Assembly: GCA_965285935.1 (NCBI GenBank)
Contig: OZ260663.1
Span: 63,736,001 to 63,800,000 of the forward strand
Direction of reading: 5' to 3'
Source: Ophelia neglecta
Taxonomy: Eukaryota
Length of the DNA: 64,000 nt
Positions 925 through 62,036 of this stretch are shown here, piece after piece. The notes under the pieces were generated by a model. It saw only the letters and a list, made by a program, of their open reading frames with translations, searched no databases and was not told the origin of the DNA. Made by a program: the position numbers and the translations under genes. Position 1 is the first letter of the stretch. The number at the start of each line of letters is the position of its first letter.

Positions 925-3900
925 TTACTTATCATATGACATTAAATAACCTTGCAATTTTGTAGGAAGGGGTAGCTTAGTCAATAGCCGGCTAATGCCA
1001 CCTCCATCATGTGAGCACAGACATTGTCTGATAGCTAGTCGACACAAATCCTGTAGAGATCTCACCCGAGACACAAAATCTACCATCCATCTAGTCAGCT
1101 CCTCATCCTTCATAGCAGTTATATTCTTAGGTAACTTCATAAGATCTCTCTTGCTGAACTGTGCTCCCACCACAAGCAGAAGTTTCAATGTTGCCAGACG
1201 GTTATTATATACGGACCAGTAAATTGGTGTGGTTTTCCTACAAAAATCAATTTTAAAGTTTATCTCTTTGTATTTTTTTTTATTCAATAGATATACAGAT
1301 AATACTGAGCCTATGATACAAACATTAATGTAATAAAAGGAAGTTGGAAAACAGGGATTTAGAACTACTGTAATGCTTCCAATAATTCGTCCAGCTAATT
1401 GTCATTGTATTAATTATTGATTGGTGAATTATTATGGCGAAAGAATTATTGACTCATGAATTACTAGATTTCCATAATAGGCTATCATGCAAGTGAGCTT
1501 ATTATTATATGAAAAATATAATTTAAGCTATGTGAAACTGAAGTAGGAGAATTAGTCTATTATTAGGGTCTTTTATTAGAGGTATAACCGAGAACATTTT
1601 TAGGCAGTTTAAAAGAGATAGAGATATTATTCCAAGAAGCTAAGAGGAAAGTAATAGCTGCGCTGTGTCTGTGCATGTGCCTACTTCCTGAGTAAATTTT
1701 ATACACTTAATAATAGTCAGTTTGTTGAAATATAAATTTAATAGAATTAATCGACTTGGAGAAGATAATATTTGAAGTTGTTTGTGCGTAATACCAGTTA
1801 AGGTAAGGTGACGATAATATTTGAAGTTGTTTGTGCGTAATGCCAGTTAAGGTAAGGTGACATGTAGGCACAGTGGCCTATTTTATACAAATATCAGAGG
1901 GACAGATGAAAAATGCATCCGTAGGCATGATGTTGATAGTCTAATGGTATCTGATGAGAAACTGAGCAAAGCAATTTGGGACAAAAAGACTGATTGACAT
2001 CCTGGGGATGCTTACATGATTTGATGAGCTCAGCTTTCTGAGCAAAAAATTGTCTAGTTCCAAAATTAGGGCATATAGATGCAATGTAATGTCTAACTAT
2101 TCCCCACTGCAATGTATAATGGCTATATTGCCAATAATTGGCAAAGCCACTATTTCATAATCTCATGCCTTTAAGCAACATTAAGCATAAAATTCCCGAT
2201 GAGAGAGTTATTTCTACCCGAAGTTCCATTTTCAATAACTATCTGCCTCCTTCATTTAATAGTGTGAACAAAAAAATGTGAGGGGCATTTCAATAGCAAA
2301 CTAACTAACTTACTACTATCAAAATGTCATGGAAGTGTTTTTTTTAAATTTATTTTCAGAAGGAACATTGTTATTAAGAATCATCAATCCACTTACCTCT
2401 TGTCAGCATGGTTTACATCTGCACCTTCTAATATCAAAAGTTTGGCATTTAATTCGAAACCAAAGTAGACACTAAGCAGCAGAGCTGTTTCCTGGTTCCT
2501 ATCCGTTTCATTTAGTTTAGCACCATGGTCTATTAGCACCTGACACACCTGTGAGGATTCCTGCCTTGATGCAATTATCAAGGGAGTTTCTCCCATCCCT
2601 GTCTTTCTGTCCAAAGGCAACTTTTTCTGCAGAATATGCTCAACAAGTTTATAGTTTTTAGACATGACTGCTAAGTGAAGCAGATTTTCTCTTTGATGCG
2701 TAAGCTGCCAAATATCTGCTCCAAGGTCTATAAGAATGTCAGTGAACATTAAATTGCCATTTTGAACAGCCAAGTGAAGAGGAGAGACAAATGGGTCATT
2801 TTTGCCATTGGCACTTGGTCCATCCACTTCTGCATTGGCTCTCAGTAAGAGTGATAAATTTTCTTCATTGTCCTGTAACACAGCATGATGCAGGGGGCCA
2901 TACTGTTGCTTGTCAACAATATCTAAATTAGCACCAAACTCAATAAGGAGGTTGACCAGCTCTGTACTCTTACATGCCACTGCTAGTATAAGTGGTGTTT
3001 CACCCTGACTATTTTGTGCATTAATTGTTATGGTACTGTCACATTCAGTATTGTTTTTATCACTTCCATTAAGCAAAAACTTGGCCATTTCTACACTTGT
3101 GTCATCTTGTGTGCATCTCAAAACTTGATGTAGTGGTGTTTCACCAATACTGTTCTTTTGATTAATCTTAGCACCTGAATTGATCAACATTTTAATAATT
3201 TCCAAGCTTCTTTTTGCCACAGCAAGATGCAGCATTGAACTTTTAGATGGCAGGGTGGCTCCTCTTATTCCAAATGTGTTTTGTATACCAGCAGAGCTCC
3301 AATCAAGTATAGCATTAGGGTCACTGCCTAATCTTAGAAGTAGACGAACAGCCTTGGCCAGGCCTCCTTTGATGGCAATGCTAAGGGGAGTTTGGGGAGC
3401 CCCGATGGTTGTGCCGCAATTGTTTACACTTGCCCCACTATTTAACAAGGCAATGCACATTCGCAAATCTTCATTATTAGCAGCCAACACTATAGGAGTT
3501 AGCCCATTATATTCCTTACTGACATTCCCGCCCAGATCAATGAGGTGATTGAGCATTTTGATGTTTTGTCGCTGAATGGCCATGATGATGTGTTCGGTCA
3601 AGTCCAAGCTGTTGGTCACAATTGATGACAAATCATTTTGTCCAGCTAATTTTACCAACTTTGATACAAGCTTGGGACAGTCATGTTTAACTGAAAACAA
3701 AAATTGTAATCATCTAATACCGGTATATGGAGATTAAAATGAAGTTATCAAGACAATACATCACATTTTTTTATAATAAAGATGGCAAAAATAACTATAG
3801 CTTGATAATTATACATCTCAAAGGTATGATTAAATGCAAACAAGGAGTTAAGAAACACAAGCCCCCACCAATTAAAGGGGATAGTAAACATTGTCTGTAG

Positions 3901-4975
3901 CAAATTACTCCTGGCAAGTCAAAGCAAGAGTGGGACTCCCTCCCCCCCCCCTCAAGATCCCCCAAAATATTTTGTTTGCTCAAAACACTGGAAATTGCAT
4001 GAAATGTTGAACAAGCAAAATCATTTTTTGACATTTTTTTTACAGATTGAATTTTATTGGTATTGCTTTGGCCTCTTATATTCAGATTTCTGCCAAAAGA
4101 TGACAAATTTATTTTGAGCCTATAACGTGTCCTCCCTGTCAATTTCAGCCCTGCAGCTGTGATACTTTTGCTTAATCTTGTTAATGAGCCTTTGTTACCA
4201 TATTGCTATAGAGGAAGTAGTATAGGCACTAGATTTACAGTTACCAGACTATGGCCAGACAGACGGACAGGGTCTAATACATATCCCCACTCTTTTTTCA
4301 AAAACAGGGTGGAGCACACAAATGCCATGTCACGCACTTACCAGCAATATGAATTAGTCCATTCACTCCACCACTGCACTGGTTAAAACTTGCCCTGTTA
4401 TCTATAAGGAGTTCAATAAGCTCTGTGTTCTGTAAACTGGCAGCTATTTGCAAAGGATATGCATTGGGAACACTGTGAGACAAGGTTTTCCTAAGCCATG
4501 GTATGGTTGCAGCTGCTTTATGTGACACAGGAATGTTTACACTAGCCCCTCTTTCTAGCAATACCTGGACAACCTTTGTCTTCTGGTTGTGGATTGCCCA
4601 CAAAAGTGGAGTTAGATCATTTGACAAAGTTTCATTCACAATGTCATTACAGTCCAGTATTTCCTTGACCAAGTCACAATCTCCTGCAGCAATGGCTTCC
4701 CAAATTGCCCCTGAAAAATATTTCTATGATGAATTTGCAAAACTGATGACAATCTTTTTTTTCATATTGGTCATCAGGTAATATTTGGGAGGCTAATTTT
4801 CTATAACTAAATCTGTTGAAACTTTACTGGGATAACAAAAGAAAAATTGTGGATATGTCTGCAACAATTCCCTTTAGGTTTCTTTCATAAAAATAAACTT
4901 ACAGTGGGGTGCGTCAATAGTTCTTCGTTCACTCATGTTACCTGTTCTCTCATGTTGCCTTGGCTGTACGATCAT
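925..4975 (-). CDS. Ankyrin-repeat and SOCS-box protein (ASB-like), ~682 aa, 4 coding exons
   Basis: Exons 4975-4903, 4710-4342, 3690-2397, 1237-925 join in frame (phases 1,1,2; GT-AG; 2049 nt). Many ankyrin repeats (GETPLHQV, GETPLILA, SPLHLAVQNGN, GETPLIIA). C-terminal SOCS box SLQDLCRLAIRQCL...LPLPTKLQGYL. The first coding exon is the least certain. Confidence 0.92.
1764..1861. repeat. 49-bp tandem duplication in the last ASB intron
   Basis: GATAATATTTGAAGTTGTTTGTGCGTAAT(A/G)CCAGTTAAGGTAAGGTGAC at 1764-1812 and 1813-1861, one mismatch. Confidence 0.95.
3860..4295. repeat. Interspersed repeat, copy 1 (second copy at ~26730-27260)
   Basis: Shares ordered blocks with 26730-27260: CAATTAAAGGG(G)ATAG, AAGTCAAAGCAAG, poly-C, AAACACTGGAAAT, GTCAATTTCAGCCC, CCATATTGCT(A/G)TAGAGGAAGTAGTATAGGCAC. 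Boundaries approximate. Confidence 0.8.
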
Positions 4976-51448: not shown

Positions 51449-53907
51449 AACTAGAAACACGTATGCCATCCCAAACATTCTTGGTTCAAAGGCAAGGACT
51501 GCAAGGAAAAAAAAAAAACCTTCTGGCCCTGATACATTGTACCTTTCCATTACATCGCTGTCAGACACAGTCGCCGTATAAGATCTGTGTCCTGGCGCTA
51601 CTTGGGATGTGTGGTAGACCATGTGGATGATGGAATTCCATCAAAGCAAATTCAGGCCTCCGCTAAAAGGAACCATGGGGGTGTCAACAACCTCGCTTGT
51701 GAATGATGTTTCGGTTTAAACTGTAACAAATGAATCAATCCTAAAGTTTTCTAAATAACCATCAGAGCTCCCTAAATTTCTAGGGATGTTTTATATTATG
51801 CTACGCTGAATCACAGAGAAACAACCGCCACGGACAATGGCAAATTTATTCTACAGGCTTTGAGAACTTCGAACTCAAAATCTGCTTCTATTATGCAGAA
51901 TCTTGATAGTTTCTCATTTCCCATGTTTGTTTTTTCTACCGATGCTCTTCCCCGCATTGTGGGGAAAACACGTGACTTAATGAAACCCACGATCCATTCA
52001 CAAACTGCGCACCTGGGATGCTATGAAAGCCAGTTGGTCTTAATCCATACTTAACTTTATTGTTATTATATATATACTTAGGAAGCGCTGGTTTAAGAAA
52101 AACCTTCGGGTTAGGCAGCCATGTAGAGGAATGAACACTTCTGGCCATGATAAGTTCAATTTTCTTTGCCCCATGAGTGTTTGAAGACATGGCAATCCGA
52201 GCATGCTCAGAACTGTTATTGTACATATTCGTTTGGTTTAAACATATTAATTTACATAATTGGGATTTCATATAAGTCTCGGACCTAAAAAGGGTAATTT
52301 CCAAAATAAGCATTAAGATAATATTTACAAATATGCTTGAGATAAAATGCGCTGATAAGGAAAGGTGAGAGATGAACCATATTGTAATTAGATGCGATAA
52401 GCTGTCTAACTTAATTAATAATTATAATAAGCAAGAAACTGGTTTGTAGGAGGCAGAAAACGGAGAGACAAGTCTGCTTAAGTAATAAAAACAAAAGAAA
52501 TATTAGAGAATGACAGACCTAGCGTTATAAAATAGTTGTGCGTGTGCGTATTCGATTGGAAAGTTCTGTATCGCTTTAACTCAAATCCGATGGGCTACCT
52601 CTAGCTGTAAATTCTTCTTATTGCTGCTGTGAGTCCAGAGATCAAAACAGAAAAGTACTATATGCTGGAGTATAGTTTTCGCGAGACTGGAACCGACAAT
52701 TCTGTCGGGTGCGTTCCAAGCCAAACCAGCGATACAAGGCCTCTTCATAGTTTTCAGCACGCAACTTTGTCTTATGGTCGTGATTGTGAGGTGTCTAGTA
52801 TAACACCTACGTGCGACTCCTCGGTTGCAGTAGCCCCTTTGCAGTTACATGTAGCTACGAAAAAGGCAATTGAGGGAGCCATAGTAACATCGAGCATTTT
52901 TGTTTCTGCCTGCAGTTTGACATTTACGACCACTGGTTGGAGGTTTCTACCTTCTTACTGACACATTATGCGGCCTCTTTTCAAGTGCGAGCCGACTTAG
53001 ACTCGTTATCAGTATAAGAAACACGATTTTCAGCATTTAATCAAGCGCTTATTCTAAAGTCATAAAAGAAGTTCAATAATATGTATTACATGTAACGTAT
53101 TTTGCCGGGGGGGGGGGGGGGGGACTCAATGTCAACTGTTAATGGAGTTGAAATCCTTATTCACAATATTAGGGCATAATAAGCGGTATAATCCTATCGT
53201 TGCTAAAAGTATGATTGGGATATTGAATTTTGAGATGGACAATATATTTTGCGATATATAGGACTATATACATTTGGTTTTAAAACCGGTGTCGAGAGAA
53301 TAAAACACAAGGATGATGCATTTTATAATTATGACCTCATGTTACTTTTGACGTTAGTCGGCCCATTGATAAGTACACTTGCAGGTGGATTCCCTCATTA
53401 TTATATCAGAATGGCCATAAAAAGCAGCTCGTATTCATTGTGTTGCTCATCAGTCTGAGTCTAGATAATAATATATACAACAGGTGCCTAGATCAGGAGT
53501 TTGATTATAATCGGGTTCATTCTCGGTAAATTGATTAGCAGCTTTACTATGAAAACCGGGACTTCTCTGTATACGTACAAAGGCAGCTGAAATATTTATT
53601 CAGCCCTGCCACAGCTGTCACAAACACGTGATTTTATAAAACGGATAACTAGATATGTACTGCTCTTATATGACAAGCCGCGCATGCATGAGCCTACAGC
53701 TGGGTTACAGCAAGGAGTTGGATATTAATTAAAATTTAGTAATTTGTTCATTGAAATTGAGCGAAGAGGCGTTGTTCAGTGCTTGACGTACAAACGGGAT
53801 ACCTGTACTTAGTGCGCGTACGCGTACCATGTGATTGTTTCATTCGTTACTTCTTTATCAAATGGATCGGATTAGGCAGCGTGCGTGATACTTGATTATC
53901 AACTACC

Positions 53908-56900
53908 ATGGAACCCGAAGAAATAGGTAAATAAATAAAAAGTTCTCTAAATTGTAAATAAAAAGTTCTCTCGGCTTAAATACGATCAGTAGGTTGGTAT
54001 AGCATATGCATGGTTACTAATGGCTACTATTCAAGACGCAAGTCCTTCTCCTGATATAATCAGTAGATTAGTATAGCATGTGATAGTAACTAGCTGTTAA
54101 ACTAGCTTGTTACTACCCTATCTAAAATGACAATTACATGTACTAAAGGGAGTAACTAATAGAAACTTCTAAAGAATAATAAAGAAATAGAGCAAAATTG
54201 TGGACAAATCAACAAGGCAGACACCCTACGCTGTTCCTGTATTATATATAATATATCTGATTATCGCAGTAAATATTATTTCATGTTTAATATACCATGT
54301 TATTAAACTCCCTATACCTTGTTCCAGATGTGCTGTCCGATCCAGCTATAAAACCTATGCGCAATGTACTATCTCGTCTGCCATGTGCTTCCCTGGTGGC
54401 TTTCATAATGTGTGTAGGAGGAATTGTAGTCTTTTCCGCTTGTCTCTATGAGGCCGTCGATTACCTCGTCACCAGATTTGAAATCGGAATGTGGGTAAAC
54501 TAGCACTATTGCTTACAAATTATCAGACCTTTCTAGGTAATAATAGTCAATGCAACAATATGATTGTCTGGTTTCTCATTCTAGAGTTGGTCAGATAGTG
54601 TGGTTGGTAATGGTGGTGCACATTGTCCTTGCTCTGTTCTTTCTGGTAGTGGCCACACTGTCGACTGGTAGGACGAGACGACAGACGTGTGGTCAGTGTC
54701 TAGCCTTTAATCTAATCGGGAGATGCTGCCACATTTTGGTGAGGAGCAAGAGTTACGCTATTTTAATAGACCATCCTAAATCGGCACTAACGTACATGTA
54801 CAACAGATAATATTTAACATCAGATTGTATTGATCAACGCAGTAAAATTGCAATTTCTTTAATTAAAAATAAAAGGTTTCTAGATCAGATTAAATTTGAG
54901 AGCATATAGTTCTTATATATCAGTCTCGCTTTTACTGAAACTGAGCCAATTATTATTGACCTGAACACTGAAGATATCTGAAGTGAGTTAAGCTAAATTA
55001 ATTACGAATAGAGCAAAGATGTCGTAATGCATATTTTTTGTTATTTAATAACAAGGGATACTGTAGCATATGCATGATGGCAGCGTCAAGGTTGAATCAT
55101 CAGCATTTATTACATTTGTTTCTCACGTACGTTTTGAATGCAATGACACTATTGAATTTACTCTTTATGAATGTGAATCAACTGTACTGGTCGTATCAAT
55201 ATTTCATATAAAAAGTTTGTCTGCACATTAACCAATTATACGTGTTATTATTGTGCAACAGGTGCTAGTGACAAATTAATACCAATTGTCTTCGATGTTT
55301 GTTTCAGTGCATAGTGCTCGCCTATATATTACACCTGGTCTGGTTTTTCTTGCCTGCCATACTGATTCTTCCCGTAGCCCTGCTAACAGCGTTTGTCATT
55401 CTCTGCCAGATAGTTCCAGACTGCATCAACCTCTCTGACTATGGTTGGTTAAGCTAATCTTCTTAGTAATTGAAAAAACTTAGATAAAATGAAAAGGTCA
55501 TTATAATTTATATTTTAGGATGTACTAAATTAACAACAGTGAAATGGGGCTTTTTATGTTTTCAGGTTATTTTTCTTCTTTTCCTTTTTGTTTTTATTTC
55601 TTTTATTAATAATTTACATAACTATCAAGCTTACAGATGCAAATAGCTTTCATGTAATGGCCTTTTGTCACTGTGCTAATACCAATATGAACATGTCCAC
55701 ATACGCCTAACAAGTTGAGCCGGAAGGCCATGTGCAGCATCCACATCATTCCATGCACTATAATCGTTCAATTTTTTTTAATCTTTGTTCTAACTTATAC
55801 TTTTCTTTGACTTCGGGTCTATTAATATTGTATTTAGCCTGGTTAATTAATAGTGTGCACAATAGTTTTTTGGTTGGTAATTTATTTTGTATTCACTACT
55901 GATAGGACATACACGCCATCTGGTGTCCGTCCTTCTTGTTGTGTAATATGTTGATACTTTTCTTTGGTTGTAATTTCATTTTACATTAACTTTTTATGAG
56001 AGATATCCATGCATATCTATCTACTCTATATCTACTGCTATTTGTGCAATTGTACTGTCATGCAAAAATCAACTTAAACTTAAGTATTATATAGTCATTT
56101 CCCTGCATCTTTACACCGCCAAACAATTGTCGCGACTGTCGAAATGGCAAATGAGCTTAAGTAGCATAACTAGATTTATGGCACGAAACAACCAAAGGGT
56201 TATGTTCACAAATATCAAAATATGAATCACTAATCCCAAATATGTACACAAGTATACAATTTGCAGTCACATCTATATAGCGGAACTGTACATAAATATA
56301 TAGGAATCGAAAAAAGATTTTGAATGAAAGGGTAACTGCTGCCTTTGATTAACTTTCTGACTTCTTTTCGCAGGTCTACCCCCTGACATTGCTGACAAAG
56401 TTAACCCTAATGACATCATACAAACTCTGAAAGGTTTAAACAAGTCTGAGATAGAGAAATACATATCAAAAGCGGAAGTCGTTTTAGATAGTGCCATTGA
56501 TGCCGCTGAAAACAGTCCTTTCCTAGAAAACATTCTTAGTACCATAGAAACAAATGTGCCGGAAGAGTCTGAAATAAATAAATTCGTGAACAACATTGTG
56601 AACAGAATCGATGTTGACAAAATTTCTCAAGTTATAGACCAGATACAAGGAGGCGTGGATAAAACCTCGGACAAGCTTAACCTGGCCCTGGACCAACTAG
56701 CTGAAAGAGCTGATGGCTTGCACTTCAACCTGGACAATCTGGACACCCACAATGACACTTTTGAAAAACTGTCGTACAAAGTCGACAACGGAACAAGGGA
56801 ATTTAATTTAACAAATCCTTTATTGCCATTTGAAGAGACGAGCCAAAACAAGACACTGCAAGAAATGAGAGATATCAACGAAACTAACAATGGGGAAACT

Positions 56901-59172
56901 ATTGCAAATGTCTCTTCAGGAAACATAGGCCGGTTCATCAAGAAAAGGGACGCACGCTCGAACGGTTCAGGGGTCACTAATAACGCCGACACTCCAGATG
57001 GAGCAGACAAAAATATAGACAAAAGAAACGAGTTAATAACAAACACAATGCTCGCTGGAAATAATTCCCTGGCAGATATTGAGGAGGAGCTACTGGCAGT
57101 GCAGAGGGCTATTCAGGCGGCGGGCGAATCAGTGGATAGAGCCAGAAATGACACACAAATAACCATTGAAGCAGCAAAGGCGGAGGCTGAGGAAATTATT
57201 AGAAATGTAACCGAGGAAGCAACGAAATCCGTGGTATCGATACAAAGAGAGGCACGTGAACTTGTAGAAACAACGAAACAGAGTGGAGCTATGACATTGA
57301 ATGAAGTGAATGACACTGCCCGGGTTAGTGTTGATGCCGCTAAGAGGGAAGTCCAGCAAGCAATGGAGAGAGTAGAAACAGCCAAAGCGGAAGCTCAACA
57401 AATGTTAAATGACGTAAAAGACAAGGAAGAAGACACGATTGAAGCAGTGCGAAAGGAAGCAAAGCGGTTAGTGGATAGCGCTATATCCACAGCAAACAAA
57501 GCAAAAGAAAATGCAAAATCTGTTCAAGCTGAAGCCGAGAAATTGGTTCGTGAAACTCAGGCTCAAGTTGCTAATGACGTAGAAAAAGCAAAAGAAAAGG
57601 CAAATAAAACCATCGAAGACGCAAAAGAATTGGCGAAAGAGACCATAACGGTATCCAAAGAGAAAGCACAAGAACTTATTCAATTTTATAATAAACGGGC
57701 AACAAAGGCGGTGGAAAATGCTAAACTGGAAGCGGATAAGATAATTGCCCATTCTAAGAGAAAAGTTAAAAATATCGCAGAGAGTGTGCAAAGTAAAATA
57801 GAAGAACTTGGACAACATGGCAGAAATATGACGGAAGACGCAAATAAATTAGCAGTACAAGTAGCTGAAGATATTAAACGCCGCATTGGCATACTAAAAA
57901 ATGACATAGACACTGTCAAAACTAACGTTGAACAAACAGCGCGGGATGCAGCTGAGAAGGTCAAGAAATTTAGTGAAAATACGATCAAGGAACTCTCCGA
58001 AATGACGAAAGAGCTGATTGAAAAGAGTAATCGATATATCAACCAGCTCACAAAAACTGCTGGCCAGATTAAGCAAGATGCTGAACTTCTGGTCAGGGAA
58101 ATTGTCAAAGATGCACAAATTATGGCAGACAAAGCACAATTGGTCGCGAAGGTAGCCGCAAAAGAGGCCGAATCAGCTCTCAAAAAGGCTACAGAGGCCG
58201 CAAAGGCTGTTGCAAGGGAATTAGATAAAAATGCCAAAGCACTTGCTGTCCAGGCCGAGAAGGAGGCGCGAAGAGCGGCTGAAATTGCCCAGCGGGCCGC
58301 TACGATGGCCCTGCAAAGAGCAAAGGAAGCAGTAAAGAATGTACGTTCAGTTATATCTGCCGCCGCTAACGGCACCACAAAGGCCATTCTGGAAGCAGCC
58401 TCCAACGTGAGGTATTATTCACAAGAGGCGTTTAAAGTTGCCCGAGTTGCTGCGAATGAGGCCGCTAAAGGTATTCGTAAAGCTGCGGCGATCTTCGATG
58501 TAGCCCGGGTCGAGATAATTAAAGGGTTTGAAATGATGTCGATTGTTGCTGACAAGCTAGGAATAGAGAGAACAGGACAGGACCAATTTTGCTCCGAAGC
58601 AAAAGTAGTTTATTGCCAAGAGGTGTGAGCTCATTCTCGTTTTTTATTTATGGAAAACTAGGCATGTCGTGGAAACATGCTTGAATTTGTTTATAGTATA
58701 TAGATGATAAAGTCATATATAATTTATGTGATAACTCCATTAATATAAACCGCACACTCTTCGTTTCAGATAGCCAAAGCACATTATCACATGATATTTG
58801 TCTTTATATCATCGGTCTTCATCAACTTGAGCATGGTGAGTGTTGCTCATTATAATAAATGGCACATACATATAGTTTGTAAGTTATTACGTTTGATATT
58901 AGCTAGATAGGTGGCATACGCTAGATATATTTATATAAATTCGCATTAAAGTAAAACTTGAAATGGTTGCAATTCAGGTCCATTTCTTAATGGCAATGAC
59001 GGCCAACTATGTTCATGTGAAGCGGGAGTTGCGCGCCAGTGCCAGACGACAGCAGCTTAAAGACTATGCATTGGAAGAAGCCACCGCAATCAAAGAGGAC
59101 GAGCAACAGCCAAACTTGCCCAAATATGACTTCACAATGTCTGAAACAGGGTCTTTTATATCAAAAGTGTGA
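53908..59172 (+). CDS. Proteolipid protein family (PLP/DM20/M6) tetraspan with a giant second extracellular loop, ~993 aa, 7 exons
   Basis: Exons 53908-53926, 54328-54490, 54585-54738, 55308-55443, 56374-58622, 58770-58835, 58978-59172 join in frame (phases 1,2,0,1,0,0; 2982 nt). Family motifs: LSRLPCASLVAFIMCVGGIVVFSACLYEAV (TM1), TLSTGRTR (after TM2), LAYILHLVW (TM3), CINLSDYGLP, HFLMAMTANYVHVK (end of TM4). Confidence 0.88.
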
Positions 59173-60197
59173 GGAATATCTATTGGAATTTAATACAAAT
59201 TCATGACTTTTGTATTGAACTTTTGGTTCAAATATGCCTATAAGTGTGTCCATTATGTTTTCCATGTTTTTCCTAAATAACGTTAGACCTCCAAGGGGCA
59301 AATGCACATCTGCCCCGCTATATGTTTTCATACAATTACTATTTTTATATCCGGGTCAGCAACATACATTGCTGCATAACATATATTCTTTATCGTCATT
59401 TGCATTATAGATAATTATATGCACATTATCCCCATAAATACAAACAGAGCAATCCTACTATATAGGCCTATACTAATAAAATAACGAGCACTAATTTTAT
59501 TGTGATATAGCTGACATCTTATACGTGTGCAGTTCTCTATTTGACCTTCAACGGGTCTCGAAAAAGAGCAAAAATTAGACAAAAAGACGTAGGTTTCAGA
59601 AGAGAAGGGGTATCATGATCTGCAGGCACCAGGTAATTTGTTGCCAGATATTTTGAAGGTGTTGGTAGGAGACCCAGCGGTTTGAATTGAGTGAGCGAAG
59701 GGAAAGAGTCTGTCTATAGTAGAGGTTAAAGAAAAAAGGAAATGTTTTATATAAATCTCTTGCATCTTTGCCTACAGCCATTAACATTAAATGTTATAGT
59801 CTTATTGCAAAATTAAAACCTTTCATACTTGTCTATATATTTTTATTGAAAAAGTGCTCGTTAAGGCCTATTCGAAAATGAGATTTGTCTAGTTGTGTCT
59901 GCCTCATTAAACTTGTACATTAATTCAAATTACAAGCGACAATTGGGGTGTCTTTATATAAATATATTTAACAGTTTGACAAAAGTCCACATTAGGCCTA
60001 AGCCAAGTAAATTTCATGTTAGTAAGGTGTGTTTTCCATATAGGTCAGACAGATGTGTGTCTGGGTTAACAATCCCGTTGATATTTTGTCAAAGAATATA
60101 TTATATATGCCGGTAAAAAAAAACAACTCGCAGAACAATGTAGCCTGCCCACCACCATGATTCTTGTCTCAAATAGGTTTCGCTAACAATCTTGTGA

Positions 60198-62036
60198 TTA
60201 AGTTATAGGCTGGTTAATATCCTGAAACGAGTCAATTTTTGGTTTTTGTGTTGACACCACCTGAATGGTTTTGACGCGTTTGATAGGCGATGGAGTTTCA
60301 GAAACATCATCCCCGTTACGTATCTTGTTGTCATCATCCGATTTTCGGTCCAAGCAGTAATGAAATAGACAAATGATGAATTCGATCATCTCTACCAGAG
60401 TTATGATAGAGACGCCAACCCAGAGACTGAGCTGTCCTCCAACGTCGCTGGCAAGCTGCGTAAGGCTATAACCCTCTGTTTCAATAATCTTGAAAATGCT
60501 CGTATCGGATACGTAGACACTCAAACGTAGAAAATTCTTGTCTTTGACAAATTTCTCGTAATGTTCAAAAGAAGGACGGGTGTTGTCGGGAGTGTGGACG
60601 CTACTGAAATATCTATGTGCTTTGTCCTCCGGAAAATTATTCAGAAAACTTTGGCCATGCAGGATTTCCTTCACGAGATCTCGCGACTGCTCTTCCATGG
60701 GCCAATCGGAGAGACTGTAAACAAAATTATACTCGTCCTCCCGGCAACTAGGTGTGCAGTCGCATGATTCCCAAGCCGAGAGGTTTTTAGAAATGTTATT
60801 TCTTGTGGTTCGCATACAACTTATGCGTTTAAACCATTTCTCCAAAATCGGACGACAAGATTCCAGGTTTGCTTCCACCTGGTTCCTACCAATACAATGT
60901 TCGGGAAGTTGGTCAAATGCCGCACAGAATGTAAAGTTTTCGGTGCCAGGTATTGGTAGACTTGGGTCGGCACAGCCACACGACTCGGTCACCAGATCCT
61001 GAAGACACATCTTTTTACAGGAGGTCATGGTGTAGGTGTAGTTAAGAAAGCTTCCCAGCTTCTGACGATGCGTGCAGTTACCATGAGGGGGTCCAAGACG
61101 CTCTTGTTGGGTGAGTTGGACCCCGAGGTACACAGCCATCCCACGAGGGATATTAATGCCATCGGTTAGGGGAAAAGGGATGGTGTTTGGCCGGTGTATT
61201 ACAACTCTCACACCTTCCCCTCCTATAGTCAGCTCTTGATTAACTGACAACAATCCCTTTGCATCGCCAGAGTAGTTCATAATCCCTATTGTGGGTACAA
61301 ACAAGACCAATGACAAACCATAATCCGGGCCCTCGTATATAGTCGCATGGGAATTCGACAAGGAAGTGTCAAAAGTGAAACAGTTGAAATAAGCAGGGTC
61401 CAGAAACTGAGTGAAGTTATGGTGAGAACAATACGCTCCAGCGTACTCACAGAACGCTACGAACTCGGCTTTTTGGATTCCTCCTTCCTTTGCTGCGGTA
61501 ACATTCATATTGGCGGCAACGGTCATTCGAGACAGCATGTCCTTTTCGGCGTTCCAAGAAAACAAGGAGTCGTTCAATTCCCGCGAAAGAATTTCAGCGA
61601 ATGCAGAGTACGACTGTTTCAGGTTTACAAACTGAATGACACTTGACTCAAAGGCTGGAAAGTTTGAATTTTCTTTGCCGGTATAGTTAAGGTCAACGCC
61701 AAATTTCCACCTTGGCATATCACTTCCGTTGTAAACAATTTCACCAAGGCTATGTATGTCCATTGATCGTATGTTACAAATGGACACTGCTGGGAAAGGC
61801 ACTGCCTCATTTGAAATATCCAATCGAACCGATTTTGGATAAGAATTGTATCGATTTAACAATATAATTCCTTGAGTAATAAGCATGCTTAGCGCACAAA
61901 TGCAAGTGCATGTCCAGAAGATCTTTCCCGTGACTGATTGAGAATGCGCAAGCCTGGGTATTCCGTGTGCCGATGATTGTTTCGCAAACTTCTTTGCAAT
62001 GTCCTTCATTTTTCCCAATAGGTTTGGGTATTTCAT
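60198..62036 (-). CDS. DEG/ENaC family channel subunit, FaNaC-like, 612 aa, intronless CDS
   Basis: SSAHGIPRL (HG motif), TM1, FPAVSICN, YFNCFTF, GPDYGLSL, GVRVVIH, Cys-rich thumb CKKMCLQ..CGCADPSLP and CDCTPSC, TM2 SDVGGQLSLWVGVSIITLVE. In-frame stop just upstream of the ATG. Confidence 0.95.
   Translation of the reverse strand: MKYPNLLGKMKDIAKKFAKQSSAHGIPRLAHSQSVTGKIFWTCTCICALSMLITQGIILLNRYNSYPKSVRLDISNEAVPFPAVSICNIRSMDIHSLGEIVYNGSDMPRWKFGVDLNYTGKENSNFPAFESSVIQFVNLKQSYSAFAEILSRELNDSLFSWNAEKDMLSRMTVAANMNVTAAKEGGIQKAEFVAFCEYAGAYCSHHNFTQFLDPAYFNCFTFDTSLSNSHATIYEGPDYGLSLVLFVPTIGIMNYSGDAKGLLSVNQELTIGGEGVRVVIHRPNTIPFPLTDGINIPRGMAVYLGVQLTQQERLGPPHGNCTHRQKLGSFLNYTYTMTSCKKMCLQDLVTESCGCADPSLPIPGTENFTFCAAFDQLPEHCIGRNQVEANLESCRPILEKWFKRISCMRTTRNNISKNLSAWESCDCTPSCREDEYNFVYSLSDWPMEEQSRDLVKEILHGQSFLNNFPEDKAHRYFSSVHTPDNTRPSFEHYEKFVKDKNFLRLSVYVSDTSIFKIIETEGYSLTQLASDVGGQLSLWVGVSIITLVEMIEFIICLFHYCLDRKSDDDNKIRNGDDVSETPSPIKRVKTIQVVSTQKPKIDSFQDINQPIT

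What the first reader, a model, noticed from the sequence alone, without database searches (positions are those of the whole stretch)
53908..59172. PLP/M6-family tetraspan with a ~725-aa insertion in its second extracellular loop
Seen: seven exons splice in frame to ~993 aa with four hydrophobic segments carrying PLP/M6 motifs. Two Cys lie in exon 4 (LCQIVPDCINL) and two at the end of exon 5 (QFCSEAKVVYCQE), with no Cys between them. Exon 5 is 2249 nt. Known (from memory): PLP1/DM20/GPM6 proteins are ~250-280 aa with four loop-2 cysteines; PLP1 has intron phases 1,2,0,1,0,0, a 74-nt exon 5 and a 66-nt exon 6. This gene has the same phase series and a 66-nt exon 6. Inference: one exon expanded ~30-fold inside the disulfide-closed loop, giving a proteolipid with a very large ectodomain. 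I know of no described family member like this. The ORF track shows it only as an orphan coiled coil.
Basis: partly seen in the sequence, partly recalled or inferred. Interest (0 to 1): 0.9.

Follow-up and report, generated by a model that had tools for sequence, protein, structure and literature searches.

The report
M6/PLP proteolipid with giant outer loop
This is a real, conserved invertebrate gene of the myelin proteolipid (PLP/M6) family whose second outer loop, about 65 residues in known members, has grown into a sugar-coated helical domain of 500 to 770 residues; I found no annotation or paper describing this build.

Summary
Seven GT/AG exons (53908-59172, + strand) join in frame with phases 1,2,0,1,0,0 to 993 codons. 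Exons 2 and 4 hit Pfam Myelin_PLP. Exon 5 is a 2249-nt open frame with only two cysteines, both at its end.

The same genome holds a normal M6 gene on another chromosome. It has the same intron phases, an 80-nt exon 5 and a 66-nt exon 6. Five other unannotated invertebrate assemblies carry the same exon order around a 500-670-codon loop region. One has an extra frame-preserving intron inside it; one splits it into at least three exons. Between two diverged copies in one assembly the loop exon shows dN/dS 0.11.

N-glycosylation sites are 2.5-5 times over chance. About 520 residues form an amphipathic helix with a hydrophobic period of 3.63 residues. The last 230 residues are predicted as a four-helix arrangement.

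Most likely this is a tetraspan proteolipid with a projecting, glycosylated helical-bundle ectodomain, stapled at its base by the family's two disulfides. What it does is only inferred. I rate it a new variant of a known kind.

The scan noted this stretch before only as the same first-reader notes.

The parts
53908..53926 (+). Exon 1: start codon plus 5 codons, ends in phase 1. This is the least certain exon.
   Evidence: ATG in a good context (acc ATG G) followed by a GT donor. It is too short to test by homology. In the orthologues exon 2 also begins in phase 1.
54328..54490 (+). Exon 2: cytoplasmic N-end and TM1, ends in phase 2.
   Evidence: Pfam Myelin_PLP 29.9 bits, E 5.9e-7, profile positions 6-38. 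34% identical to exon 2 of the canonical paralogue, E 1e-7. Hydropathy 2.48.
54585..54738 (+). Exon 3: TM2 and the Arg/Cys-rich cytoplasmic loop, ends in phase 0.
   Evidence: Hydropathy 3.09. 47-66% identical to the orthologous exons.
55308..55443 (+). Exon 4: TM3 and the start of outer loop 2, with the cysteine pair C-x5-C and an N-L-S site. Ends in phase 1, inside a Gly codon.
   Evidence: Pfam Myelin_PLP E 0.004, profile positions 115-148. 55-73% identical in five other assemblies, all with a 'g|gt' phase-1 donor.
56374..56750 (+). Exon 5, part 1 (residues 1-125 of the exon): conserved helical N-terminal module of the loop.
   Evidence: phmmer hits P0004, P0005 and P0012 (E 4e-17 to 5e-6). 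54% identical to L011. Aligned in A1. Predicted as short helices, at low confidence. No second copy in this genome.
56751..56990 (+). Exon 5, part 2 (residues 126-205): variable, disordered linker rich in Asn-x-Ser/Thr sites.
   Evidence: pLDDT 25-40 and no secondary structure. 7 of the 15 sequons lie here. The region varies in length and does not align between species.
56994..58556 (+). Exon 5, part 3 (residues 207-727): Ala/Lys/Glu-rich amphipathic helix region. Its last 210 or so residues are conserved.
   Evidence: Hydrophobic period 3.62-3.64 with power 569, against a shuffle 95% level of 63. The phase is constant over about 500 residues and the same period appears in all orthologues. AF2 predicts all helix. 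phmmer hits P0001-P0003, E 1e-42 to 8e-35.
58572..58622 (+). Exon 5, end: G-x-D-x-[FYI]-Cys-x7-Cys-x-Glu, the third and fourth loop cysteines. The donor is in phase 0.
   Evidence: G, D, both Cys and one Lys are invariant in 12 sequences. The canonical paralogue ends its 80-nt exon 5 with the same G-x-D...Cys-Cys pattern, with one more residue between the two Cys (C-x8-C).
58770..58835 (+). Exon 6, 66 nt: end of the loop and first part of TM4.
   Evidence: 66 nt in all five orthologues and in the canonical paralogue. 45-73% identical.
58978..59172 (+). Exon 7: rest of TM4, basic cytoplasmic tail, stop codon.
   Evidence: BLASTP against the last exon of the canonical paralogue, E 2e-5. Orthologous exons in L006 and L009.

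Best explanation
The gene encodes a four-pass membrane protein of the PLP/M6 proteolipid family. The usual short second outer loop is replaced by a domain of about 770 residues. The domain leaves the membrane after loop cysteine 2 and returns just before cysteine 3. By homology with PLP, where the two cysteine pairs form two disulfides, its base is stapled shut. From start to end it consists of four parts: a conserved helical module of about 125 residues, a variable N-glycosylated disordered linker, about 520 residues of amphipathic helix, and a small hairpin carrying the last two cysteines. The amphipathic helix has a 120-degree, Ala/Val/Ile/Leu-rich apolar stripe.

Shown:
- the gene structure and family membership of the membrane core;
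- conservation of the build in six assemblies;
- purifying selection on the loop;
- excess of glycosylation sites;
- the helical periodicity.

Inferred:
- The helices fold back on themselves into an elongated antiparallel bundle. The last 230 residues are predicted as four helices of 40-60 residues.
- The bundle stands many nanometres above the membrane, where PLP loops rise about 1.5 nm.
- The M6 core supplies membrane-domain targeting and cis-dimerisation.
- The outer domain acts as a glycosylated spacer or binding arm on the cell surface. I give this functional reading about 35%; the architecture itself about 80%.
For: - Gene model and phases.
- Pfam Myelin_PLP on exons 2 and 4 here, and on exon 2 above the cut-off in three orthologues.
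- Canonical paralogue in the same genome with identical phases, an 80-nt exon 5 and a 66-nt exon 6.
- Exhaustive phmmer with exon 5 found seven related ORF calls. Their contigs carry the M6 exons in the same order and phase around the big exon: L006, L007, L011, L009, L014.
- L011 has a 565-nt GT..AG intron inside the loop that keeps the frame.
- dN/dS: 0.11 (39.5 synonymous against 16.5 non-synonymous changes, no indel in 483 codons, binomial p 1.5e-14) for L009 against L018, and 0.14 for L007 against L017.
- In this species exon 5 has 5.3 SNPs per kb and no indel, against 11.9 per kb and 4 indels in the introns (Fisher p 0.022).
- Skipping exon 5 would shift the frame (phase 1 into phase 0).
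- Sequons are 2.5-5 times the shuffle mean in all six sequences, and each big exon holds only two Cys.
- Periodicity and face make-up.
- AF2 of the C-terminal module: pTM 0.57, four helices plus a hairpin.
- DNA contigs chain across 53800-59300, so there is no sign of a chimera.
- EC2 of rat M6a is residues 149-213 (PMC7396582). PLP forms parallel cis dimers and its outer loops rise about 1.5 nm (PMC9279222).
Against: - There is no RNA evidence of any kind; the three runs that hold the stretch are DNA.
- Exon 1 is a guess.
- The joined protein was not scanned or folded, so the family hit rests on single exons. Exons 3, 6 and 7 give no Pfam hit on their own, and the L006 exons give none.
- The whole-exon AF2 model is poor (pLDDT 54.5, pTM 0.29), and the fold search gave only generic helical bundles.
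- The charge pattern has acidic residues on one flank of the stripe and basic residues on the other, in both halves. That fits parallel pairing between subunits better than a simple two-helix hairpin.
- No annotated protein of this build turned up in the libraries searched, so no outside gene model confirms the splicing.
Confidence: 0.8

Rival explanations
1. The same gene, but the loop works as a tethered apolipoprotein/LEA-like lipid binder. The amphipathic helices lie flat on a lipid surface (the cell's own outer leaflet, a lipoprotein particle or an apposed membrane) instead of packing into a free-standing bundle.
For: Weak Pfam hits to Apolipoprotein A1/A4/E (E 3e-4, 20.9 bits) and ApoLp-III (E 0.11). 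The apolar stripe is near-straight, with period 3.63 and lags of 11, 18 and 22. The composition is Ala/Lys/Glu-rich. PLP-family proteins are lipid-organising proteins (PMC9279222).
Against: The Apolipoprotein score is far below the cut-off of 90 bits. The apolar face is only about 120 degrees wide and 40% Ala, with almost no aromatic residues. Basic residues lie on one flank only, not on both as in class A lipid-binding helices. The C-terminal module is predicted to fold on itself (pTM 0.57). The Atlas feature search gave nothing.
Confidence: 0.2
2. The long form is a minor or conditional isoform. Most transcripts use an internal in-phase acceptor near the 3' end of exon 5 and make a normal-sized M6 protein.
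For: No RNA data exclude it. In-phase AG sites that would give exons of 62-77 nt exist in the window (my reading; this site was not among the top-ranked sites), in L011 and in L014.
Against: Those sites have poor pyrimidine tracts (0.50-0.55, against 0.75-0.80 at the real acceptors of the window and L014) and are not at a conserved place. The whole loop is under purifying selection with no indels. A normal M6 gene already exists in the genome.
Confidence: 0.1
3. The big frame is a separate nested gene, or a non-functional open stretch, lying in an intron of an M6-like gene or pseudogene.
For: ORF callers list it as a stand-alone helical protein without family.
Against: Homology between species starts at the acceptor and stops at the donor. 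There is no conserved start codon and no signal peptide. The family's third and fourth loop cysteines are coded at the end of this same frame, and no other exon 5 exists. Phases are conserved in six assemblies. dN/dS is 0.11. There is no second copy of either conserved module in the genome.
Confidence: 0.03

Closest known systems
Glycoprotein M6 / GPM6A, GPM6B, PLP1/DM20 (Pfam PF01275 Myelin_PLP), including the single Drosophila M6
   Same: Four membrane helices. Pfam hit on exons 2 and 4. Two plus two cysteines in outer loop 2. An N-glycosylation site beside cysteine 2. A Cys-rich basic inner loop. The same intron positions and phases as the canonical M6 gene of this genome. A 66-nt exon 6. 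A similar start of the last exon.
   Different: Outer loop 2 is about 770 residues, against 65 in rat M6a (residues 149-213, PMC7396582) and about 60 in the paralogue here. The stretch between cysteines 1 and 2 is shortened to five residues. The loop contains two conserved modules with no detectable relatives outside this subfamily.
Canonical M6 paralogue of the same genome (G000 C7:60046345-60053889, loci L005/L012)
   Same: Phases 1,2,0,1,0. Exon 4 ends in 'g|gt' inside a Gly codon after N-L-S-x-[YF]. Exon 5 ends two codons after the second Cys of a G-x-D...Cys-Cys motif. Exon 6 is 66 nt.
   Different: Its exon 5 is 80 nt, not 2249 nt, with C-x8-C instead of C-x7-C. Identity in exon 2 is only 34%.
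Exchangeable apolipoproteins and group 3 LEA proteins (11-residue amphipathic helix repeats)
   Same: Long Ala/Lys/Glu-rich helices with a non-heptad hydrophobic period close to 11/3. Weak Pfam similarity.
   Different: The score is far below the family cut-off. The period is 3.63, not 3.67. The apolar face is narrow and Ala-rich, and the charges are one-sided. The domain is membrane-tethered at both ends and glycosylated. This is a likeness in design, not in descent.
Elongated helical-bundle surface proteins (trypanosome haptoglobin-haemoglobin and factor H receptors, Borrelia PFam12 proteins)
   Same: Best, though non-significant, structural neighbours of the C-terminal module: long antiparallel helices on a cell surface.
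   Different: Foldseek E is 0.01 or worse, TM-score 0.3-0.5, and there is no sequence relation. Those proteins are lipid- or GPI-anchored at one end, not inserted in a tetraspan loop.

Membership tests
PLP/M6 proteolipid family (Pfam PF01275 Myelin_PLP) | Match to the family HMM above the curated cut-off | tested here: met
Exon 2 alone scores 29.9 bits against a cut-off of 23.8 (E 5.9e-7). Exon 4 scores 17.3 bits (E 0.004) at the right profile positions. Exon 2 of L011, L014 and L009 scores 26-29 bits.
PLP/M6 proteolipid family (Pfam PF01275 Myelin_PLP) | Four hydrophobic membrane segments, with both ends and the middle loop on the cytoplasmic side | tested here: met
   Hydropathy peaks lie in exons 2, 3 and 4 and across exons 6/7, with none in exon 5. 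Basic, Cys-rich stretches follow TM2 and TM4. The sidedness is inferred from homology and from the excess of sequons in the loop; it was not measured.
PLP/M6 proteolipid family (Pfam PF01275 Myelin_PLP) | Four conserved cysteines (two pairs) in outer loop 2 | tested here: met
   C-x5-C in exon 4 and C-x7-C at the end of exon 5. The last two are invariant in 12 sequences. The disulfide bonds themselves cannot be tested with these tools.
PLP/M6 proteolipid family (Pfam PF01275 Myelin_PLP) | Family gene structure (shared intron positions and phases) | tested here: met
   Phases 1,2,0,1,0 and a 66-nt exon 6 are shared with the canonical paralogue of the same genome.
PLP/M6 proteolipid family (Pfam PF01275 Myelin_PLP) | Short outer loop 2 (about 60-65 residues) and a total length of about 250-350 residues | tested here: not met
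   The loop is about 770 residues and the protein 993. This is the point of difference. It is a size trait, not a criterion of descent.
Apolipoprotein A1/A4/E (Pfam PF01442) | Match to the family HMM above the curated cut-off | tested here: not met
   20.9 bits against a cut-off of 90.
Left-handed heptad coiled coil | Hydrophobic period of 3.5 residues | tested here: not met
   Power at period 3.50 is 0.7, against 569 at 3.64.

The most novel reading that the evidence does not exclude
The long-loop M6 proteins form a separate, old branch of the proteolipid family. Their cis-dimerising tetraspan core carries a rigid, tens-of-nanometres helical arm that sets the distance between wrapped or apposed cell membranes. 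One possible setting is the loose glial sheaths around invertebrate giant axons. In that case the family known for gluing myelin membranes 1.5 nm apart would also have a member built to hold them far apart.
Probability: 0.1. Interest if true: 0.8.

Novelty: new variant of a known kind. Interest (0 to 1): 0.62.

Why it matters
PLP, DM20 and M6 are studied as compact proteolipids whose small outer loops mediate close membrane apposition and partner binding. A conserved branch whose loop has become a 500-770-residue glycosylated helical domain shows that the tetraspan core tolerates, and can present, a large ectodomain between its two disulfides. This gives a natural test case for what the core itself contributes (targeting, dimerisation, lipid organisation). 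It also adds a gene family that current annotation misses: in the libraries searched its members occur only as nameless ORF fragments.

Tried and rejected
- RNA evidence. Laid on 53800-59300 they cover the introns and are therefore DNA. No expression or junction data could be had.
- The search for homologous proteins, three times: whole exon 5, the profile A1, and residues 1-120. All were blank. The word index is swamped by Ala/Lys/Glu-rich proteins, or shares no 5-residue words, and did not even return P0001-P0003. These blanks mean nothing.
- ESM Atlas feature search: no usable hit.
- Complex prediction of loop residues 207-481 against 486-727, a test of a two-arm hairpin: no verdict (score 0.00, controls not run). 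This is no evidence either way.
- AF2 of the whole exon 5: pLDDT 54.5. I used it only for secondary structure.
- Foldseek against the PDB with the C-terminal module: only generic bundles, E 0.01 or worse.
- Naming the species from its genome size in genome notes: no paper found.
- The 2008 review of proteolipid phylogeny (PubMed id 19497142) is not held, so I could not check whether it mentions long-loop forms.
- Cluster look-up: none of the related proteins has a name or accession.
- DNA for P0002 and P0017 could not be fetched.
- Considered and rejected: assembly chimera, nested gene, and exon skipping (which would shift the frame).
Full report
**1. The observation**

The stretch 53908-59172 was read directly, and the exon borders were checked by script.
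- The seven exons are 53908-53926, 54328-54490, 54585-54738, 55308-55443, 56374-58622, 58770-58835 and 58978-59172.
- All have AG acceptors behind pyrimidine tracts, and GT donors.
- Cumulative lengths give phases 1,2,0,1,0,0 and 2982 nt, which is 993 codons plus a stop.
- Exon 5 is 2249 nt. Its 749 whole codons are open and hold two cysteines only, at residues 739 and 747.
- Exon 4 ends with the loop pair C-x5-C followed by N-L-S-D-Y and a split Gly codon.
- Hydropathy peaks lie in exons 2, 3 and 4 and across the exon 6/7 junction. There is none in exon 5.

Every search was done exon by exon, by reference.

**2. Family of the membrane core**

- Pfam Myelin_PLP hits exon 2 alone at 29.9 bits (cut-off 23.8, E 5.9e-7, profile positions 6-38) and exon 4 at E 0.004 (profile positions 115-148).
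- A six-frame scan of the whole assembly (762 Mb; the window is C5:63736001-63800000) with the same HMM finds this locus and one other, on C7.

I annotated the C7 gene by hand from L005 and L012:

| Exon (C7 gene) | Locus and place | Length | Phase |
|---|---|---|---|
| 2 | L005:6345-6495 | 151 nt | in 1, out 2 |
| 3 | L005:8202-8364 | 163 nt | out 0 |
| 4 | L005:9460-9625 | 166 nt | out 1 |
| 5 | L012:28-107 | 80 nt | out 0 |
| 6 | L012:1085-1150 | 66 nt | - |
| last | from L012:3767 | - | - |

- Exon 4 of both genes ends with Cys-[IL]-N-L-S-x-[YF] and 'g|gt' inside a Gly codon.
- Exon 5 of both ends with G-x-D, then two cysteines 7 or 8 residues apart, two more codons, and then the donor.
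- In the normal gene seven residues lie between the split Gly and the G-x-D motif. Here about 730 do.
- Exon 2 is 34% identical between the two genes (E 1e-7).
- The starts of the last exons align at E 2e-5.

**3. Is the big exon part of the gene?**

No RNA was available. The single run search returned three runs of one sample, and their contigs cover the introns, so they are DNA.

They are still useful.
- Contigs chain without a break across 53800-59300. The only difference is a 117-nt indel polymorphism in intron 4.
- Exon 5 has 12 SNPs and no indel in 2249 nt. The introns have 26 SNPs and 4 indels in about 2190 nt (Fisher p 0.022; pN/pS 0.40).

The main evidence is comparative. An exhaustive phmmer search of 1.84 billion representatives with exon 5 gave seven relevant hits:
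- three ORF calls of 509-574 residues that match both ends of the exon (E 1e-42 to 8e-35);
- short pieces that match either the first 70-140 residues or the last 45-105 residues.

All come from unannotated ENA or Logan assemblies, and none has a name.

I fetched their contigs and searched them with the single exons. Five assemblies show exons 2, 3, 4, the big loop region, a 66-nt exon 6 and, where the contig reaches far enough, exon 7, in the same order and on the same strand:
- L006 (ENA ERZ25767047);
- L007 (Logan ERR14368249);
- L011 (ERZ25084518);
- L009 (ERZ25069853);
- L014 (ERZ25072724).

The splice sites agree.
- Exon 4 always ends 'g|gt' in phase 1.
- The next exon always completes a Gly codon.
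- The loop region always ends in phase 0 after the cysteine motif. L009 uses a GC donor there.

The loop region is about 510 codons in L006 and L007, 555 in L011, about 665 in L014, and at least 670 in L009.
- In L011 it is interrupted by a 565-nt GT..AG intron in phase 2 that restores the frame exactly where the alignment with the window continues.
- In L009 it is spread over at least three exons, separated by repeat-rich introns.
- In L014 there is one in-frame TAA, in an assembly of 3.2-fold depth. A close relative (P0004) reads Glu at that place.

Two pairs of close copies allow a codon test.
- L009 against L018, two contigs of one assembly: 39.5 synonymous and 16.5 non-synonymous differences in 483 codons without an indel. 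dS is 0.13, dN 0.015, and the ratio 0.11. The binomial p against neutrality is 1.5e-14.
- L007 against L017: 6 synonymous and 3 non-synonymous differences, ratio 0.14.

Three further points bear on the rivals.
- Skipping exon 5 would join phase 1 to phase 0 and shift the frame.
- No conserved, well-formed in-phase acceptor near the 3' end would give a normal-sized exon.
- Neither conserved module of the loop occurs anywhere else in this genome.

Taken together, the big frame is a translated, selected part of this gene. The nested-gene and chimera readings are very unlikely. A minor short isoform cannot be excluded without RNA.

**4. Anatomy of the loop**

Alignment A1 and the models give four parts.

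(a) Residues 1-125 are a conserved module of short helices, about 50% identical to the nearest orthologue.

(b) Residues 126-205 are a variable, disordered stretch with 7 of the 15 Asn-x-Ser/Thr sites. In other species this part is longer and Ser/Thr/Pro-rich.

(c) Residues 207-727 are predicted as helix throughout, with breaks near 303-307, 482-485, 616-617 and 666-667.

(d) The end carries G-x-D-x-[FYI]-Cys-x7-Cys-x-Glu, with G, D, both Cys and one Lys invariant in 12 sequences.

Sequons are 2.5-5 times the shuffle mean in all six sequences (p 0.016 or less). This fits an extracellular loop, as the family topology predicts.

Helix periodicity:
- The helix region has a hydrophobic period of 3.62-3.64 residues, with power 569 against a shuffle 95% level of 63.
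- There is no power at 3.50.
- Autocorrelation peaks fall at lags 7, 11, 18, 22, 29, 33 and 40.
- The same period recurs in every orthologue.

Make-up of the helix faces:
- The phase stays within about 35 degrees over roughly 500 residues.
- The apolar face is about 120 degrees wide and 75-83% apolar, with 40% Ala and almost no charged residues.
- Acidic residues gather on one flank and basic residues on the other.

Structure prediction:
- The whole-exon AF2 model is weak (pLDDT 54.5).
- The conserved last 230 residues, folded with alignment A2, reach pLDDT 67 and pTM 0.57. They come out as four helices of 40, 51, 48 and 60 residues plus a small hairpin before the cysteines.
- Foldseek against the PDB gives only generic long helical bundles: designed bundles, Borrelia surface proteins and trypanosome surface proteins, all at E 0.01 or worse.
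- A complex test of the two halves of the helix region gave no verdict.

**5. How it most likely works**

Established for the family (from the literature):
- four membrane helices, with both ends in the cytoplasm;
- a large outer loop EC2 of 65 residues in rat M6a, whose cysteines are needed for folding and function, and which is taken to determine partner binding (PMC7396582);
- PLP and DM20 form parallel cis dimers, and their outer loops rise only about 1.5 nm above the membrane (PMC9279222).

Shown here: the core and the four cysteines are kept, and the insert lies between cysteines 2 and 3.

Inferred:
- The two disulfides close the base of the insert, so the chain must leave and return at one point. 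The 520-residue helix must therefore fold back at least once.
- The 80-residue linker is too short to return from the tip of a single 78-nm rod.
- The likeliest form is an elongated antiparallel bundle made of 40-170-residue helices, possibly paired between the subunits of a cis dimer. The acid-against-base flanks fit parallel neighbours best.
- Such a domain would make the protein a glycosylated spacer or binding arm, rather than a close-contact adhesive.

A tethered, apolipoprotein-like lipid-surface binder is the main functional rival (about 20%). Its weak points are the narrow Ala-rich face, the one-sided basic residues, and the Pfam score far below the cut-off.

**6. Comparison and novelty**

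The membrane core passes the membership tests for PLP/M6: the HMM match, four segments, four loop cysteines and the family gene structure. It fails only the size trait.

The loop has no detectable relatives outside this subfamily.

Literature:
- I found no paper describing a PLP/M6 member with a large EC2.
- The key review of proteolipid phylogeny is not held, so the literature check is incomplete.

In the libraries searched the family appears only as nameless ORF fragments.

Earlier notes of this scan call the genome an annelid's. I did not test that, and the species of the other assemblies are unknown, so the taxonomic range is open.

**Verdict:** a real gene; a new variant of a known kind; interest 0.62. 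It is held back by the missing RNA evidence and the unknown function.

Noticed in passing
window 60198-62036 (- strand): A 612-codon single open frame with the look of a DEG/ENaC-type channel subunit (two membrane segments and a Cys-rich outer domain) lies 1 kb downstream, convergent with the M6-like gene.
   Followed up: no
window 925-4672 (- strand): Several long open frames made of ankyrin-type repeats, probably exons of one gene.
   Followed up: no
window 55986-56104: A 117-nt stretch in intron 4 is replaced by five other letters in contigs of all three DNA runs: an indel polymorphism, next to a stretch of raised depth at 55824-56007 that looks like a repeat.
   Followed up: partly
L012:1864-1992 and L012:3767-3889 (G000 C7): The canonical M6 paralogue seems to have two alternative last exons. 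Both begin with a [VM]-x-F-L-[IM]-x-[MI]-[TS]-S-[NS]-Y-like TM4 end and have different tails.
   Followed up: no
L009 and L018 (both ENA ERZ25069853): Two contigs of one assembly carry the long-loop gene with 13% synonymous divergence. They may be very divergent haplotypes, a recent duplicate, or two related animals in one sample.
   Followed up: partly
P0008 (4271 aa): A giant protein matches residues 101-172 of exon 5 in 16 separate stretches (36% identity, E 2e-9). This is probably a shared Asn/Asp/Leu-rich repeat rather than homology.
   Followed up: no
L014:9985-13383 (- strand): A Ty3/gypsy-type retroelement polyprotein frame (RT, RNase H, integrase) lies 1.4 kb downstream of the orthologous gene.
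   Followed up: no
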